A stretch of 64,000 nucleotides of DNA, taken from IMG/VR virus record IMGVR_UViG_3300042514_000542, positions 1-64,000 of that record, one strand, 5' to 3'. The stretch's first letter is position 1; each line of letters starts with the position of its first letter. A program made the position numbers and the translations under genes. Below are positions 21,625 to 62,062 of the stretch, in pieces. The notes under the pieces are model-generated. The model searched no databases. It was given only the letters and a program-made list of their open reading frames with translations, and was not told the origin of the DNA.

Positions 21625-21695
21625 CGCGGTGAGGTAGTCTGGTGACTACGGTAGGCTCATAACCTACAGAGATGTGTTCGATTCCATCGCTGCAA
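21625..21695 (+). tRNA. tRNA-Met(CAT), C1:A72 initiator-like, irregular T arm
   Basis: GTAGG-CT-CAT-AA-CCTAC. Confidence 0.75.
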
Positions 21696-21703
21696 CATAT
21701 AAT

Positions 21704-21777
21704 CGCAGGTAAGTGGTCTGGTTTGACCATTCGGCCCTCATAAGGCTGAGAGGTAGGTTCGATTCCTACACCCGCAT
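21704..21777 (+). tRNA. tRNA-Met(CAT), C1:A72 initiator-like
   Basis: CGGCC-CT-CAT-AA-GGCTG; GTAGG-TTCGATT-CCTAC. Confidence 0.8.
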
Positions 21778-21785
21778 CATATAAC

Positions 21786-21861
21786 TGGAGGGTGGCCAAG
21801 TGGTTAAGGCAACGGCTTCATACGCCGAAGATCGTGGGTTCGACTCCCACCCCTCCTACCA
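21786..21861 (+). tRNA. tRNA(CAT), elongator Met or Ile2, with CCA
   Basis: CGGC-TT-CAT-AC-GCCG; canonical D and T arms. Confidence 0.85.
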
Positions 21862-23940: not shown

Positions 23941-24012
23941 GCTGAGTTGGCAGAGTGGTTATGCGGTTGTCTCTAAAACAACTTTACATGGGTTCGAATC
24001 CCATACTTAGCA
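23941..24012 (+). tRNA. Amber suppressor tRNA (anticodon CTA)
   Basis: Acceptor GCTGAGT/ACTTAGC+A; anticodon arm GTTGT-CT-CTA-AA-ACAAC; T arm ATGGG-TTCGAAT-CCCAT. Confidence 0.88.
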
Positions 24013-24015
24013 CAT

Positions 24016-37535: not shown

Positions 37536-38174
37536 GTGGAATCATTCGCACTATATTATGAAAAATTTTCTCTAAATCCAAGAAATTGGTTTATGAGTAA
37601 AGAAGAGAAGTTGAGGATAAGAGAACAAGATATTGAAATGCGTAAAGTCGCAATGCGACACGCTAGAGAAAACTTCAAAAAGATGAAAGACCTTTTGGCT
37701 TCAAAAGGTTATAGAATTCACAAGCACGACTTTTCTTATACTGTTAGGGGTGATAAGAAGGTGGGGATGGAACCTCCAAGACGAGATAAAATTAAGATTG
37801 GTGATCGTCAACTAGACATCCCATATCTCAAAACATTGTTTACAATGGCACATGAAGTTGGACATGTCTTACAATGGGATGATTCGACTAATAATAAACA
37901 TAAATTTGATGAGTTTTATTTATCTCAACTACGTGCTGAAATAGATAATGGTTATAATCATAGATTAAATCTGGAACATATACACAAAGTTTGGTATGAA
38001 TTAGATGCTTGGATTCAGGGTATGCAATTTATACCTATGGAATATAAACAAATATATAAAAAGTATGCATTTGATGCATATAAAACATATATGAATAGAG
38101 GTCCGAAGTATTATTATAATGATATGCTTCTTAGAACCCTATTAATTAAATTGAATGCTAAAGACCACTTTTAA
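37536..38174 (+). CDS. HExxH zinc metallopeptidase-like late protein
   Basis: TMAHEVGH...ELDAW; ATAAATA-N5-GTG; N-terminus MESFALYYE. Confidence 0.65.
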   Translation: MESFALYYEKFSLNPRNWFMSKEEKLRIREQDIEMRKVAMRHARENFKKMKDLLASKGYRIHKHDFSYTVRGDKKVGMEPPRRDKIKIGDRQLDIPYLKTLFTMAHEVGHVLQWDDSTNNKHKFDEFYLSQLRAEIDNGYNHRLNLEHIHKVWYELDAWIQGMQFIPMEYKQIYKKYAFDAYKTYMNRGPKYYYNDMLLRTLLIKLNAKDHF

Positions 38175-39660
38175 CATTCGGTATCATCTGTTTGGCTTTC
38201 TTATAAACCATCTGTTCCGTAATCTCTCTATTACTAAGTAACATTTCCGCAACCCAATCCTGTAATTTAGGAAGGTATAATCCCAATTGCTTTCTATCCG
38301 TTTGGAACTGTGGAAACCATTGCATTAACATATTCCCATTAATGATCGAGGAGATTCTCTTTTTGAGTTCTTCACCACCACCGGGAATAACATTTAATTT
38401 AGCCTCGGCTCTTTCAATCTTATCTAAGAACTCCTGCTTATTGAAAAGACCTGGACCACGGGAGGCTTCATCGCAATATCCAACAGCTTTAATGGTTTCC
38501 CAAGCTGGGTTATGTATAATTCTTCTTAGAACTTTAAGACTTAGTTTATCCAGTCCATGAACATGCATATGGTTTGCTACCGCAGCTAAAATATTCTTCT
38601 TATCATCTGGCCCAAGTTTAGCAAAACGTAATCTCTTAAAGATATTCTCAACAATGGGAACACCAGCAGATTCATGGGAGTGATAATTGCTAAAACCATT
38701 TGGTTTGATCCCCCTAGTTGTAGCCTTTCCAAAATCGTGGAATAATACAGCGAGATTTATAACTGGATCTGTATATGGTGATACTCTTAAGCATTCATGT
38801 ATATGACCCAGAACTTGCGAATCTCCTTCTGGATGATGTGCTGGATCATGGTCAAAACCTTCCATATCTGTAAATTCTGGAAGAATATCATGTAGGATTC
38901 CTGCGTCTTGTAATTTTTTCAGGAAGTTTGATAGGGTTGGTCCAGACTTAGCAGCCTTATACATTTCTTGGGAAATGCTCTCCTGTGAAATTAATTTAGG
39001 ATTTAATAATAGGTGTTTTAATTCCTTGGCAGCTTCCAATGTATCTGGTTCAATATCAAAGTCCATCTTGGCAGCAAATCTAAAGACTCTAAGAAGTCTG
39101 GTAGCGTCTTCCTTAAATCTTTCCTTGGCATTGCCAACAGCACGGATTACCTTATTCTCAAGATCCTTTAAACCTCCTTGGTAGTCAACGATACGACCAT
39201 GATAATCCAGACCAAAACTATTGATTGTAATATCACGCCTTTTTGTATCAGTCTCAAAACTATCAACTTCTGTGGATATGTTTTGTTGTCTACCCATTGC
39301 CGTTTGAGCATCTTCTCTAAACTTTGCTAAATCGAATGCATAATTATTATATAAAATGGTGTATACTGGTTGAGTATCATTCTTTGATATGTTTCTCAAC
39401 TCGAAATGATTAGATAAATCATCAAAGGAAATATTAGTTGCCATATCGACATCATCGATCTCATTACCCATAAGAAGATCCCTTGGAACACCACCAACAA
39501 TATATATCTCCCCTGTTGGAAATAATCCCATGATTTTGGTCATTAGTTCAAGACCAACACGTAATTCCTCAGATGAAGCTAAGGCTTGCTCCCATTTATC
39601 GGAAAAGTCTTCTACATTGTAGTTTACACTCTCTTTAAAGAATTTTGAAAAGGTTATCAT
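38158..39660 (-). CDS. cca: Class II tRNA nucleotidyltransferase (CCA-adding type) with HD domain
   Basis: YIVGGVPRDLL...DVDMAT, RRDITINS, EDATRLLR (EDxxR template motif), HHPEGD and LFHDFGK; no obvious poly(A)-polymerase G[RK]RF signature. Confidence 0.88.
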   Translation of the reverse strand: MITFSKFFKESVNYNVEDFSDKWEQALASSEELRVGLELMTKIMGLFPTGEIYIVGGVPRDLLMGNEIDDVDMATNISFDDLSNHFELRNISKNDTQPVYTILYNNYAFDLAKFREDAQTAMGRQQNISTEVDSFETDTKRRDITINSFGLDYHGRIVDYQGGLKDLENKVIRAVGNAKERFKEDATRLLRVFRFAAKMDFDIEPDTLEAAKELKHLLLNPKLISQESISQEMYKAAKSGPTLSNFLKKLQDAGILHDILPEFTDMEGFDHDPAHHPEGDSQVLGHIHECLRVSPYTDPVINLAVLFHDFGKATTRGIKPNGFSNYHSHESAGVPIVENIFKRLRFAKLGPDDKKNILAAVANHMHVHGLDKLSLKVLRRIIHNPAWETIKAVGYCDEASRGPGLFNKQEFLDKIERAEAKLNVIPGGGEELKKRISSIINGNMLMQWFPQFQTDRKQLGLYLPKLQDWVAEMLLSNREITEQMVYKKAKQMIPNVKSGL

Positions 39661-55501: not shown

Positions 55502-55593
55502 TGGTAGGGACGGTCGGAATTGAACCGACAAAGGAGTTATCCACTCCATACCCGATTATGAGTCGGAACCATTACCATTCTGGCCACATCCCT
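55502..55593 (-). tRNA. tRNA(CAT) with a long variable arm and CCA
   Basis: AGGGATG/CGTCCCT+ACCA; TCCGA-CT-CAT-AA-TCGGG; variable arm GGAGT-GGATA-ACTCC. Confidence 0.8.
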
Positions 55594-60472: not shown

Positions 60473-60646
60473 TTAATACTCCCAACCTTCATACTTCTTA
60501 TAGGTTGGTTGACATTCTGGATCAAGTTTAGCCTTACGTCTTTCTTCCCTCTTCTTGGACTTCTTTAGAAAGTCTCTATACCTTGATCGTTTATGTGAAC
60601 CATCCTTCTTGGGAAAGTCCATATACCTTTCGATTTGTTCATTCAT
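60473..60646 (-). CDS. Small highly basic protein
   Basis: K/R-rich; stop inside a repeat. Confidence 0.6.
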   Translation of the reverse strand: MNEQIERYMDFPKKDGSHKRSRYRDFLKKSKKREERRKAKLDPECQPTYKKYEGWEY

Positions 60647-60703
60647 AATGAGATAATTGTTCAATCTTATCAAAAAGTTAAGTCTGTTCCGATAAATAAT
60701 ATT

Positions 60704-61399
60704 ATGGCAAAGAAGATAAATTTAGATGTTGAGAAGTTGAAAAGTTTAAATGATGAGGGTATGACGATAACGGAAATAAAATTACATTTTGGAGTCTCGG
60801 ATGACTTAATTAGAAATTATTTCAAATTATATAATTTAATACCTAATCGAAAGAAGAGGAAATGGTCTGAAGACGAAAAGTTAAAAATTTCTAAAAGAAG
60901 AAAGATTTTCCTAAAGGAGAATCCCGATAAACATCCTTGGAGGTCTAAGGATAAGTTTAAATCAGTTCCATGTGAGAAGGTTAAAGATTTTTTGAATAAT
61001 TTAGGTGTGAAGTTTATTGAAGAATATGATCCAAATATACACAATAGAACATTTTCTATTGATATTGCCATGCCCGATAAGTTAATAGCATTAGAGATTA
61101 ATGGTAATCAACATTACGAGAGTGATGGTAGTTTGAAACCATACTATCAAGAACGTCACGATCTATTAGAATCCAACGGATGGACTGTATATGAAATACA
61201 TTATAGTGCTTGCTTCAATCTCGATAAGTGGAAAAATTTTGTCGATGAATTAAAGTCATCTAATAATAAGATTAATTTCAATTACTTCGAATATACACCT
61301 AACGAAATCAAAAAATGGATATGCTCTGATTGTGGTTGTGATGTTAGCCGTGGATCAATTAGATGTAAATCTTGTTATTATATTTCTCGAATAAAATAA
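60704..61399 (+). mobile_element. Free-standing DUF559/Vsr-like (PD-(D/E)xK) putative homing endonuclease
   Basis: SIDIAMPDKLIALEINGNQHY...RHDLL...GW.V; N-terminal HTH and C-terminal CxxC...CxxC; antisense to neighbours; GATAAATA late promoter. Confidence 0.78.
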
Positions 61400-61479
61400 T
61401 GGTAGCCCCGACACGATTCGAACGTGCATATATCCAATTACCCTTTTTCCTCGTTAGAAGCGAGAGGGGATACAAGGCC
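61400..61479 (-). ncRNA. D-armless tRNA-Arg(TCT)-like RNA with CCA
   Basis: GGCCTTG/CGGGGCT+ACCA; CTCG-CT-TCT-AA-CGAG; GCACG-TTCGAAT-CGTGT; TATCC/GGATA stem in place of the D arm. Confidence 0.7.
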
Positions 61480-61494
61480 ATTGAAAGTTATTTA

Positions 61495-61737
61495 TTATAG
61501 AGTCTCATTAATTACACTATACAGTTCCTTCTTCAACTTAATAGCATCCTTAATAATATTATAAGAAAACATAATGTCAACCATGCTTACACAAACACTA
61601 TGAGCATCACGAAGGTCTAGGTTATTATCAAGACAATACTTTGTAGCCTGATTAGAAGCATCTTGCATGATGCGTTCAAGATCGGTAACATCATCACCAA
61701 TGGCAGCACCATATTTGTTATAGAGTCTCTTTTTCAT
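61495..61737 (-). CDS. Hypothetical protein
   Basis: Follows 61739-62062; likely start MKKRLYN. Confidence 0.6.
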   Translation of the reverse strand: MKKRLYNKYGAAIGDDVTDLERIMQDASNQATKYCLDNNLDLRDAHSVCVSMVDIMFSYNIIKDAIKLKKELYSVINETL

Positions 61738-61738
61738 A

Positions 61739-62062
61739 TTACCAAATCTTTCCAAGTGTTTCCATCACTTTTTCTTTAACTCTTTCGTCCCAGCCAGCAG
61801 TTCTATTAACACGACCATTCTTAATAACACCACGATTGGTCTTAGTATTAACAGCAGCAATCCTTATGGCATCAGCACCCACTTTTCTTGATACACCATT
61901 AGGAGTAACAGAAGAGAACACCTTGATTAGAATGTCTGTATTCTTTTTGACTACAAGAGTATATACATACTCACCACCTTCGATTACCTTGTTCCAACCC
62001 TTATCAGGTTTGAAGAGTGTATCGGTTTCAATTTCTGTAACGGTAACGTATGTTGCAGCCAT
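61739..62062 (-). CDS. Hypothetical protein (cassette)
   Basis: TATAAT-N6-ATG at 62062; SRKVGADAIR...RVNRTAGW motif. Confidence 0.7.
   Translation of the reverse strand: MAATYVTVTEIETDTLFKPDKGWNKVIEGGEYVYTLVVKKNTDILIKVFSSVTPNGVSRKVGADAIRIAAVNTKTNRGVIKNGRVNRTAGWDERVKEKVMETLGKIW

What the first reader, a model, noticed from the sequence alone, without database searches (positions are those of the whole stretch)
61400..61479. D-armless tRNA-Arg(UCU)-like RNA with rearranged core
Seen: the acceptor, CCA, T arm and anticodon hairpin (CTCG-CTTCTAA-CGAG) are intact. The D arm is absent; instead TATCC-CCT pairs with a long 3' insert (AGG-GTAATT-GGATA). AGA is visibly a frequent Arg codon here and no canonical tRNA-Arg(TCT) was found in the window. 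Inference: a non-cloverleaf decoder, or a decoy for anticodon nucleases.
Basis: partly seen in the sequence, partly recalled or inferred. Interest (0 to 1): 0.6.

Follow-up and report, generated by a model that had tools for sequence, protein, structure and literature searches.

The report
Phage arginine tRNA with rewired core
This 80-base gene belongs to a large phage family of arginine tRNAs, for which I found no published description, in which the D arm is replaced by a helix that encloses the anticodon arm and the D-loop lies downstream; standard tRNA finders miss it, although it probably reads this phage's commonest arginine codon.

Summary
The element is real. It lies on the minus strand at 61479..61400 and has a 7-bp acceptor stem, U8A9, an anticodon hairpin (UCU), a canonical T arm and an encoded ACCA. 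It has no D hairpin, and ARAGORN and Rfam's tRNA model miss it.

It is not a one-off or a pseudogene. Pattern scans plus a covariance model found 130 distinct sequences with the same architecture, in viral contigs and in cultured phages of Streptomyces, Microbacterium, Caulobacter, Vibrio, Pseudomonas and Alishewanella.

- **Location:** the genes sit in phage tRNA arrays.
- **Anticodons:** 127 of 130 carry arginine anticodons and 3 carry isoleucine anticodons. They rarely duplicate a canonical neighbour's anticodon.
- **New helix:** a short helix (here UCCC/GGGU) brackets the anticodon arm and covaries perfectly.
- **D-loop:** that stretch (AAUUGGAUA) is an unpaired D-loop moved into the variable region. 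It keeps G18G19 and A20, the main ArgRS determinant.

The phage is 206.6 kb, 35% GC, from lake water. It uses AGA for 52% of its Arg codons and has no other tRNA-Arg(UCU).

My best reading is a working AGA decoder with rewired core connectivity. No expression or charging data exist. I found no prior description.

The parts
61473..61479 (-). Acceptor stem, 5' strand (RNA positions 1-7, GGCCUUG).
   Evidence: It pairs 7/7 (three G.U) with 61404-61410. The acceptor helix is paired in 99.6% of cells across 35 homologues, and all 7 pairs show double changes.
61471..61472 (-). U8 A9 connector.
   Evidence: 'TA' is present in 130/130 family members.
61467..61470 (-). X helix, 5' strand (UCCC). It takes the place and length of D-stem strand 22-25 and runs straight into the anticodon stem.
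   Evidence: It pairs with 61440-61443. The two central pairs are Watson-Crick in 35/35 and in 103/103 and 102/103 members of the main subtype. The outer pair is U.U in most members.
61466..61466 (-). Single nucleotide (C) between the X helix and the anticodon stem, equivalent to position 26.
   Evidence: 103 of 130 members have exactly 10 nt between U8A9 and the anticodon loop. By standard tRNA numbering this equals positions 22-31.
61449..61465 (-). Anticodon arm: stem UCUCG/CGAGG, loop CUUCUAA, anticodon UCU at 61458-61456, with U33 and A37.
   Evidence: Sequence. All 5 stem pairs show double changes across homologues. The family's anticodons are 127 Arg and 3 Ile.
61444..61448 (-). A-rich linker (AAAAA) between the anticodon stem and the 3' strand of the X helix.
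   Evidence: The family linker is usually 4-5 nt (AGAA, UGAAA).
61440..61443 (-). X helix, 3' strand (GGGU). It takes the place of D-stem strand 10-13 and is followed directly by the D-loop.
   Evidence: The final U is invariant.
61431..61439 (-). Displaced D-loop, AAUUGGAUA (A14, A15, G18G19, A20, A21 equivalents).
   Evidence: It is the same 9-mer as the D-loop of the canonical tRNA-Arg(UCU) at the syntenic place in L002. All 17 Arg-anticodon members found by the covariance model alone have GG followed by A. Both Ile members found that way have GG followed by U. Identity rules are from PMC9976931.
61428..61430 (-). 3-nt connector (UAU) to the T stem. Its last U is the proposed partner of A15 (Levitt-pair equivalent).
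   Evidence: The second D-loop nucleotide and the nucleotide before the T stem are A/U in 128 members and G/C in one.
61411..61427 (-). T arm: stem GCACG/CGUGU, loop UUCGAAU.
   Evidence: Sequence. The helix is 100% paired across homologues, and 4 of 5 pairs show double changes.
61400..61410 (-). Acceptor stem 3' strand (CGGGGCU), discriminator A (61403) and encoded CCA (61402-61400).
61553..61580 (-). Possible promoter (TTGACA, 16 nt, TATTAT) about 70 nt upstream of the tRNA's 5' end, inside the end of ORF 61495-61755.
   Evidence: 11 of 12 consensus matches. This is a consensus match only and is not evidence of function.

Best explanation
It is a functional phage tRNA-Arg(UCU) that reads AGA, and probably AGG. 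It belongs to a widespread phage family of tRNAs that keep the parts of a tRNA but connect the core differently.

**Connectivity.** After U8A9 the chain enters a short helix strand (X5') and runs straight into the anticodon stem. After the anticodon stem, a 4-5 nt linker leads to the partner strand (X3'). This is followed by a normal D-loop sequence (A14, A15, G18G19, A20, A21), and a 3-nt connector then enters the T stem.

**Proposed fold (inferred).**
- The X helix stacks on the anticodon stem exactly as a D stem does, with the same 10-nt length.
- The displaced D-loop still docks on the T-loop to form the elbow and presents A20 to ArgRS.
- The molecule is therefore L-shaped and is handled by RNase P, ArgRS, EF-Tu and the ribosome.
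- Each new chain junction (9 to 22, 45 to 10, 21 to 46-48) links nucleotides that already touch in canonical tRNA. This rests on textbook tertiary interactions.

**Shown:** the architecture, its conservation and covariation, its place in tRNA arrays, its anticodon spectrum and its identity nucleotides.

**Inferred:** expression, processing, charging, decoding and the 3D fold.
For: 1. **Recurrence.** The same architecture is found in 17/19 hits of a first pattern scan and in 44 members after a second scan. A further 91 covariance-model matches come from 100 loci of a third scan. In all there are 130 distinct sequences.
2. **Covariation.** 92% of cells are paired, and the covariation score is 0.90 against 0.21 in shuffles. 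The X-helix pairs are Watson-Crick in 35/35 although they were not used to select members. In the main subtype they are paired in 103/103 and 102/103.
3. **Model separation.** Model R1 scores members 41.6-90.7 bits and canonical tRNAs at most 31.5 bits.
4. **Context.** 140 of 162 instances lie within 1.5 kb of another tRNA. Only 7 of 162 share an anticodon with a canonical tRNA of the same locus.
5. **Mildred21.** In this Streptomyces phage, the family supplies Arg TCG, ACG and TCT, while the only canonical Arg tRNA annotated across the tRNA region examined (72-97 kb) is CCT.
6. **Anticodons.** TCT 55, ACG 41, TCG 21, CCT 7, GCG 3, GAT 2, TAT 1.
7. **Identity elements.** A20 follows G18G19 in all 17 Arg members found by the model alone. 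Both Ile members found that way have U20, A73 and A37; Mildred21_c also has A38, whereas L353 has U38. These match the bacterial ArgRS and IleRS determinants in PMC9976931, Table 1.
8. **Demand.** In this genome AGA is 51.6% and AGA+AGG 66% of Arg codons. The only other Arg tRNA has anticodon ACG.
9. **Synteny.** A related contig has a canonical tRNA-Arg(UCU) with the same D-loop 9-mer downstream of the homologous gene.
10. **Population.** The DNA is identical in three other lake metagenomes.
Against: - There is no RNA evidence. No run holding the stretch is on record as RNA, so transcription, 5'/3' processing and aminoacylation are untested.
- The X helix is short. It has two strictly conserved Watson-Crick pairs (three here) plus a U.U pair.
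- Thermodynamic folding of the single sequence prefers another pairing (-20.3 against -17.6 kcal/mol), and its z-score is unremarkable (-0.34).
- RNAalifold does not call the X helix on its own.
- Ascertainment is biased. The search patterns fixed GGA and GTTCGA, so A20 and T-loop conservation are partly imposed. Only the 19 members found by the model alone are free of this.
- Some phages carry a canonical tRNA with the same anticodon beside the rewired one, for example Zooman with ACG. Gap-filling is therefore not the whole story.
- The 3D model is reasoning from canonical tRNA, not a computation.
Confidence: 0.72

Rival explanations
1. It is a defence-evading or decoy tRNA. Its main role would be in the phage-host conflict. 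It could be a replacement tRNA-Arg whose altered core escapes a host tRNA-directed nuclease or modifier that recognises the D arm or core. Alternatively it could be a sponge that soaks up such an enzyme. This overlaps with the best explanation if the RNA is also charged.
For: - The family is essentially phage-only. It appears in 42 of about 119 viral pattern hits against 1 of 120 hits in cellular genomes, and that one is a 3-kb contig identical to a viral one.
- It was found in 0 of 302 sampled cellular genomes.
- It sometimes sits beside a canonical tRNA with the same anticodon (Zooman), which pure supply does not explain.
- One amino acid dominates the family, which would fit a threat specific to tRNA-Arg.
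Against: - The anticodon stem-loops are ordinary (CUUCUAA, CUACGAA), so nucleases that read the anticodon loop would still cut them.
- No Arg-specific core-reading defence is known to me.
- Conserved ArgRS and IleRS identity nucleotides and complementary anticodon sets point to charging and decoding rather than mimicry.
- No nuclease or inhibitor gene is consistently adjacent in the loci inspected.
Confidence: 0.15
2. It is a non-translational tRNA-like element. It could be a processing or stability signal at the 3' end of the leftward operon, or a regulatory or priming mimic that is not aminoacylated for decoding.
For: - It lies 15 nt after the stop codon of ORF 61495-61755, at the end of a run of minus-strand genes.
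- No terminator-like site lies nearby.
- tRNA-like shapes are reused for other jobs in viruses (own knowledge).
Against: - Family members sit inside tRNA arrays, not at operon ends.
- The anticodon triplets are restricted to Arg and Ile and track identity nucleotides. A mere processing signal would not need this.
Confidence: 0.06
3. It is a decayed tRNA pseudogene, a tRNA-Arg(UCU) scrambled by a local rearrangement and no longer functional.
For: - tRNA finders reject it.
- A homing-endonuclease-like ORF abuts it.
- A relative has a canonical gene at the same place.
Against: - 130 distinct sequences from unrelated phages share the architecture.
- Compensatory changes occur in all four helices.
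- U8A9 is invariant, as are the D-loop and T-loop motifs within the 35-member alignment, though the search patterns partly imposed those.
- The sequence is identical across lake metagenomes.
Confidence: 0.02

Closest known systems
Canonical bacterial and phage class I tRNA-Arg (e.g. the tRNA-Arg(UCU) at L002:1757-1831)
   Same: - A 7-bp acceptor stem, a 5-bp T stem with a TΨC-type loop, and a 5-bp anticodon stem with a 7-nt loop.
- U8, and a D-loop sequence with G18G19 and A20 (an identical 9-mer in L002).
- A discriminator of A, G or U, a similar overall length, and a location in phage tRNA arrays.
   Different: - There is no D hairpin.
- The D-stem-like helix is made of two strands that flank the anticodon arm.
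- The D-loop follows the 3' strand of that helix and lies where the variable loop should be.
- Rfam's tRNA model gives no hit here, and at most 32 bits for other members against 40-69 bits for most of their neighbours.
Metazoan mitochondrial D-armless tRNAs (tRNA-Ser(AGY/UCU); review PMC7609411)
   Same: No D hairpin. The anticodon helix is effectively extended. They are missed by standard cloverleaf models.
   Different: - Those are shortened and flexible, and lack the G18G19/T-loop elbow contact. They also need adapted mitochondrial factors.
- This family is full length and keeps a canonical T-loop and a D-loop motif.
- It occurs in phages of bacteria.
- ARAGORN's mitochondrial mode does not find it.
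allo-tRNAs, tRNA-Sec and the (8/4) tRNA-Ser/His of bacteria and phages (PMC5389517)
   Same: They are natural non-canonical tRNAs, some in phage tRNA clusters, found by metagenome mining.
   Different: Those change stem lengths (8/4 or 9/3 acceptor/T) and have long variable arms, but they keep the normal order of arms. Here the stem lengths are canonical (7/5) and the order and connectivity of the core segments are changed.
tRNA-like structures of plant RNA viruses (TYMV-type TLS)
   Same: They reach a tRNA-like shape with non-tRNA connectivity and can be aminoacylated (own knowledge; PMC9976931 mentions valylatable TLSs).
   Different: Those are 3'-terminal parts of RNA genomes, with a pseudoknotted acceptor arm, and have no decoding role. 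This is a free-standing gene in a DNA phage's tRNA set, with a normal acceptor stem and anticodon loop.
Permuted or split tRNA genes (red alga Cyanidioschyzon, archaea; own knowledge)
   Same: The order of tRNA segments in the gene departs from the cloverleaf order.
   Different: In those, processing restores a canonical mature tRNA. Here no processing route would restore the canonical order, so the mature RNA itself would have the new topology.

Membership tests
Canonical cloverleaf tRNA (Rfam RF00005 / ARAGORN definition) | Reaches the family's detection score. | tested here: not met
   There is no RF00005 hit at the gathering score or at E<=10 in a 301-nt search. ARAGORN finds nothing in default, relaxed or mitochondrial modes.
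Canonical cloverleaf tRNA (Rfam RF00005 / ARAGORN definition) | A D-arm hairpin between position 9 and position 26. | tested here: not met
   Only 5 nt (UCCCC) separate U8A9 from the anticodon stem.
Canonical cloverleaf tRNA (Rfam RF00005 / ARAGORN definition) | A 7-bp acceptor stem, a 5-bp T stem with a UUCRANY loop, and a 5-bp anticodon stem with a 7-nt loop carrying U33 and R37. | tested here: met
   Sequence.
Rewired-core phage tRNA family (model R1, defined here) | Covariance-model score well above that of canonical tRNAs. | tested here: met
   79.7 bits, E 3e-18. The next best hit in the genome is 31.5 bits. The window sequence was in the seed alignment, so this match is partly by construction. 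Members not in the seed score 41.6-82.9 bits.
Rewired-core phage tRNA family (model R1, defined here) | U8A9, then a 4-nt X5' strand, 1 nt and the anticodon arm. Next come a linker, an X3' strand ending in U, a D-loop motif A-R-N(1-3)-GG, and a connector ending in U before the T arm. | tested here: met
   The window has UA, UCCC, C, the arm, AAAAA, GGGU, AAUUGGAUA, UAU and the T arm.
Bacterial ArgRS substrate (arginine identity set; PMC9976931) | A20 in the D-loop, C35, U/G36 and A/G/U73. | tested here: met
   The window has GG followed by A (61433), anticodon UCU (C35, U36) and discriminator A. Whether this A occupies the position-20 pocket in 3D is inferred.
Bacterial ArgRS substrate (arginine identity set; PMC9976931) | Actually aminoacylated with arginine. 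| not testable with these tools
   This needs an in vitro charging assay, or acid-gel or tRNA-seq analysis of infected cells.
Mitochondrial-type D-armless tRNA | A D-replacement loop with loss of the D-loop/T-loop elbow motifs, and a shortened molecule. | tested here: not met
   The element is full length (77 nt plus CCA), with the G18G19 motif and a canonical T-loop retained. ARAGORN -mt is negative.
Expressed, processed mature tRNA | A mature transcript with RNase P-cut 5' end and a CCA 3' end. | not testable with these tools
   No listed run that holds the stretch is on record as RNA. The contigs laid are DNA only.

The most novel reading that the evidence does not exclude
Phages of many bacterial phyla carry a natural 'topological isomer' of tRNA. 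The D-stem strands and D-loop are reconnected around the anticodon arm, yet the RNA still folds into an L-shape. It would then work with the ordinary bacterial RNase P, ArgRS or IleRS, EF-Tu and ribosome. This fold would have been overlooked because tRNA finders reject or mislabel it. It may exist because it is blind to some host system that recognises the canonical core of tRNA-Arg.
Probability: 0.55. Interest if true: 0.88.

Novelty: new variant of a known kind. Interest (0 to 1): 0.8.

Why it matters
- **tRNA structure.** If these RNAs are charged and decode, the cloverleaf order of arms is not required for a tRNA to work on bacterial translation machinery. The spatial arrangement of helices, elbow and identity nucleotides would be enough. 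That would be a natural experiment in tRNA architecture and a ready-made scaffold for engineering orthogonal tRNAs.
- **Annotation.** ARAGORN misses 156 of 162 instances. GenBank records leave them blank or call them tRNA-Phe, tRNA-Ser or tRNA-OTHER. Phage tRNA repertoires are therefore under-counted, and analyses of codon usage against tRNA supply are biased for arginine.
- **Biology.** The restriction to phages, and almost entirely to arginine, suggests either a property of ArgRS recognition or an unknown host pressure on tRNA-Arg.
- **Tractability.** The family occurs in cultured phages of Streptomyces, Microbacterium, Caulobacter, Vibrio and Pseudomonas, so all of this can be tested directly.

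Tried and rejected
**Searches that found nothing or little**
- ARAGORN in default, relaxed (-ps80) and metazoan-mitochondrial modes found nothing at the site.
- Rfam at permissive E-values gave only noise (snoR136, algC, ycf2 at E>4).
- An exact 24-mer search of viral contigs gave 0 hits.
- blastn of the surrounding 1.1 kb against named phages gave only a weak hit to an HNH endonuclease gene.
- Searching with the 86-aa upstream ORF found no relatives.
- Of three loci found with the 109-aa ORF, two (L003, L004) have no synteny and no tRNA.
- Salmonella Felix O1-like phages matched only in the T arm and are not members.

**Structure tests**
- Single-sequence folding is uninformative (z = -0.34).
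- RNAalifold recovers only the three classical helices.
- An alternative D-like hairpin (GCAU...AUGU) in one subfamily would consume part of the T stem and does not generalise, so I rejected it by inspection.

**Readings considered and rejected**
- An intron-containing, permuted or split gene: removing any segment does not restore a cloverleaf.
- An attP or tRNA fragment: both acceptor strands are present.
- A pseudogene: see the rival explanations.

**Other limits**
- Expression: no listed holder of the stretch is on record as RNA, and the laid contigs show DNA identity only.
- The surveys of cellular genomes are samples. 'Not found in those searched' is all that can be said. Two calls (69, 70) failed because of a wrong handle type.
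- Eight literature searches and four papers read gave no description of this architecture. That library lacks most subscription journals.
- I did not use the large protein searches, protein structure prediction, complex prediction or any alternative genetic code.

Full report
**What is at the site**

Read on the minus strand, window 61479..61400 is an 80-nt tRNA-like gene. In order it contains:
- a 7-bp acceptor stem (GGCCUUG with CGGGGCU, three G.U pairs);
- U8A9;
- five nucleotides, UCCCC;
- a 5-bp anticodon stem with loop CUUCUAA (anticodon UCU, U33, A37);
- AAAAA, then GGGU, then AAUUGGAUA, then UAU;
- a 5-bp T stem with loop UUCGAAU;
- the acceptor 3' strand, discriminator A and an encoded CCA.

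There is no D hairpin. ARAGORN finds 23 tRNAs in the window and in the whole 206,590-bp genome, but not this one, even in relaxed or mitochondrial mode. Rfam's tRNA model does not report it even at E<=10.

**It is a family, not an accident**

A contig whose neighbouring gene is 51% identical has an ordinary tRNA-Arg(UCU) downstream of that gene (separated by a different small ORF). Its D-loop is the same 9-mer, AAUUGGAUA, that in the window lies 3' of the anticodon arm.

I then searched viral contigs for the abnormal order: anticodon loop, then this 9-mer, then the T arm.
- The first scan gave 19 hits, 17 with exactly the window's architecture and different, complementary acceptor strands.
- Dropping the anticodon from the pattern brought the total to 44 members, the window included.
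- A third, looser pattern plus a covariance model (R1) gave 91 more matches in 100 loci.
- With copies in named phages there are 130 distinct sequences.

R1 scores members 41.6-90.7 bits and canonical tRNAs at most 31.5 bits. The window's element scores 79.7 bits and is the only copy in its genome.

**The structure that is conserved**

The first 35 distinct members were selected without reference to the new helix. On their alignment the acceptor, anticodon and T helices all show compensatory changes.

A fourth helix, which I call X, joins the four nucleotides after U8A9 to the four nucleotides before the D-loop motif.
- Its two central pairs are Watson-Crick in 35/35 sequences, with four pair types each.
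- Its outer pair is U.U in 32/35.
- Overall, 92% of cells are paired, against 57% in shuffles, and the covariation score is 0.90 against 0.21.
- Across the 103 members of the main subtype the central pairs hold in 103/103 and 102/103.

In the window X is UCCC (61470-61467) with GGGU (61443-61440).

Its pairs to the invariant GG form in only 19/35 and 21/35 sequences and never change on both sides. That stretch is an unpaired D-loop, not a helix strand.

Single-sequence thermodynamics does not decide the matter. The family structure is -17.6 kcal/mol and the MFE is -20.3 kcal/mol. RNAalifold alone recovers only the three classical helices.

**Why I read it as a working tRNA**

1. **Genomic context.** 140 of 162 instances lie within 1.5 kb of another tRNA gene, typically inside phage tRNA arrays.
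2. **Anticodons.** They are TCT 55, ACG 41, TCG 21, CCT 7, GCG 3, GAT 2 and TAT 1. That is 127 arginine and 3 isoleucine.
3. **Complementarity.** Only 7 of 162 instances share an anticodon with a canonical tRNA in the same locus, although those loci hold 76 canonical Arg tRNAs. In the tRNA region of Streptomyces phage Mildred21 that I examined (72-97 kb), the only annotated canonical Arg tRNA is CCT. The family supplies TCG, ACG and TCT.
4. **Identity nucleotides.** 19 members were found by the model alone, so no search pattern forced their sequence.
   - All 17 with Arg anticodons have A after G18G19 (A20).
   - The two with Ile anticodons have U there, plus A73 and A37; one also has A38.
   - These match the bacterial ArgRS set (A20 as main determinant, C35, U/G36, A/G/U73) and most of the IleRS set (U20, A73, A37, A38) tabulated in PMC9976931.
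5. **Levitt-pair equivalent.** The second D-loop nucleotide and the nucleotide before the T stem are A/U in 128 members and G/C in one. This fits a 15-48 pair.
6. **Demand in this phage.** AGA is 51.6% of Arg codons and AGA+AGG 66%. The only other Arg tRNA is ACG.

The phage is a 35% GC, distant T4-like myovirus-type genome. Its major head protein is about 32% identical to cyanophage gp23. It encodes its own CCA-adding enzyme and comes from lake water. The element's DNA is identical in three other lake metagenomes.

**Proposed mechanism (inferred)**

In 103 of 130 members exactly 10 nt lie between U8A9 and the anticodon loop. In a canonical tRNA this is the length of D-stem strand 22-25, position 26 and anticodon-stem strand 27-31.

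I therefore equate X5' with 22-25 and X3' with 10-13. X3' is followed, as in any tRNA, by A14, R15, G18G19, A20 and A21. The 3-nt connector stands for 46-48 and the A-rich linker for 44-45 plus a turn.

The three new chain junctions join nucleotides that are neighbours in the known tRNA core.
- Position 9 lies on the 12-23 pair.
- Position 45 lies on the 10-25 pair.
- Position 21 lies beside 8-14 and 46/48.

These are textbook tertiary interactions, from my own knowledge. The same L-shape could therefore form, with the D-stem-like helix stacked on the anticodon stem and the elbow and A20 pocket intact. This part is reasoning only. No RNA 3D tool was available.

**Distribution and prior knowledge**

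Members occur in cultured phages, mostly unannotated or mislabelled.

| Phage(s) | Status in the record |
|---|---|
| Streptomyces 130-kb phages (Mildred21, four copies; dozens of other Streptomyces phages gave blastn matches, not verified individually) | blank, 'tRNA-OTHER' or 'tRNA-Phe(gaa)' |
| Microbacterium phage Zooman, two copies (blastn matches in A3Wally, Pumpernickel and Magritte were not checked with the model) | unannotated or under a 'hypothetical protein' CDS |
| Caulobacter phage CcrColossus (relatives by blastn only) | unannotated |
| Vibrio phage D260 | unannotated |
| Pseudomonas phage vB_PsaM_M1 | unannotated |
| Alishewanella phage Slicko01 | 'tRNA-Ser' |

Rfam's tRNA model gives four members 29-32 bits, just at threshold, and misses the rest.

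That member is a 3-kb contig in a metagenome-assembled genome, identical to a viral contig. R1 found none in 302 sampled genomes of two phyla. These are samples, with stricter filters.

Eight full-text searches did not turn up this architecture. Nor did the 2020 review of non-canonical tRNAs (PMC7609411) or the allo-tRNA paper (PMC5389517). The library lacks most subscription journals, so a prior description cannot be excluded.

**Rivals**

- A pseudogene is excluded by the conservation and covariation.
- A processing signal or other non-decoding mimic does not explain the anticodon spectrum or the identity nucleotides.
It could explain phage exclusivity, the bias to arginine, and cases where a canonical tRNA with the same anticodon sits next door (Zooman). 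Nothing here tests it, and the anticodon loops are ordinary.

**Limits**

- There is no expression, processing, charging or structural data.
Family size, host range and amino-acid spectrum are therefore lower bounds and are biased.
- E-values from R1 are rough because calibration was short.
- A second subtype of 27 members, with a 6-bp anticodon stem, has an X helix in a slightly different register that I did not fully resolve.

**Verdict**

The element is one member of a widespread phage tRNA family with rewired core connectivity, for which I found no published description.

Noticed in passing
window 23941-24013 (+): A suppressor-type tRNA with anticodon CUA, which ARAGORN labels tRNA-Pyl (Rfam tRNA 63.8 bits). 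TAG ends only 11 of 206 long ORFs in the genome. This could mean amber read-through or recoding late in infection, or a counter-defence role.
   Followed up: partly
window 55502-55593 (-): A 92-nt tRNA with anticodon CAT and a long extra arm (Rfam 47.1 bits), which is unusual for a Met/Ile2-type tRNA. It lies next to tRNA-Leu(UAA), away from the main tRNA array.
   Followed up: no
window 21625-21861 (+): Three tandem tRNA genes with anticodon CAT, four in the window in all. They are presumably initiator, elongator and Ile2 (lysidine) types. One scores only 31.8 bits in Rfam.
   Followed up: no
window 60635-61399 (+): A 254-aa ORF with weak PD-(D/E)XK/RAP-type nuclease signals and an N-terminal region like a phage 'HNH endonuclease'. 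It is probably a homing endonuclease. Its stop codon ends 1 nt before the 3' end (CCA) of the rewired tRNA on the other strand. Endonuclease genes also flank family members in Mildred21 and Vibrio phage D260.
   Followed up: partly
window 61553-61580 (-): A near-consensus sigma-70-like promoter (TTGACA, 16 nt, TATTAT; 11/12) inside the end of ORF 61495-61755, about 70 nt upstream of the tRNA. It could give the tRNA its own transcript.
   Followed up: no
window 38158-39660 (-): The phage encodes a tRNA nucleotidyltransferase (CCA-adding enzyme; phrog_2244, E 5e-58). In Mildred21 the Ile-type rewired tRNA lies immediately after the homologous gene.
   Followed up: no
L273 (Mildred21 MF155946.1 91367-91442 and 86379-86453); L394 (Alishewanella phage Slicko01 OQ508956.1 17417-17495): Public records mislabel family members. 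An Arg(TCG) member is annotated tRNA-Phe(gaa), an Arg(TCT) member is annotated tRNA-OTHER, and another Arg(TCT) member is annotated tRNA-Ser.
   Followed up: yes
L266:1501-1577 (Mildred21 73703-73779); L353:7666-7742; L026:10605-10681: Three members carry isoleucine anticodons (GAU, UAU, GAU). Two have switched the D-loop position after GG from A to U and have A73, as IleRS requires. L026 keeps the Arg-type D-loop, so its identity is unclear.
   Followed up: partly
L252:1454-1673 (Zooman OK040793.1 89043-89262): A canonical tRNA-Arg(ACG) and a rewired tRNA-Arg(ACG) lie 70 nt apart in the same phage. This redundancy is not explained by simple tRNA supply.
   Followed up: no
L117 (viral contig; hit): A canonical-looking cloverleaf tRNA (anticodon loop CTAAGAA) carries the motif TAATTGGATA in its variable region as well as a normal D arm. 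It might be an evolutionary intermediate or an unrelated oddity.
   Followed up: no
loci, e.g. L326:723-802, L361:12349-12428: A second subtype of 27 members, about 80 nt long, has a 6-bp anticodon stem, the 5' segment (G/A)CCG-A, and D-loop AACUGGAGCUGAAAAU. Its X helix seems to use a different register with a conserved C.C opposition.
   Followed up: partly
window 61437-61482, metagenome run X6: A different, low-depth contig in another lake metagenome matches only the D-loop-to-anticodon part. It continues into a different T arm and acceptor. So a second family member from another phage is present in the same habitat.
   Followed up: no
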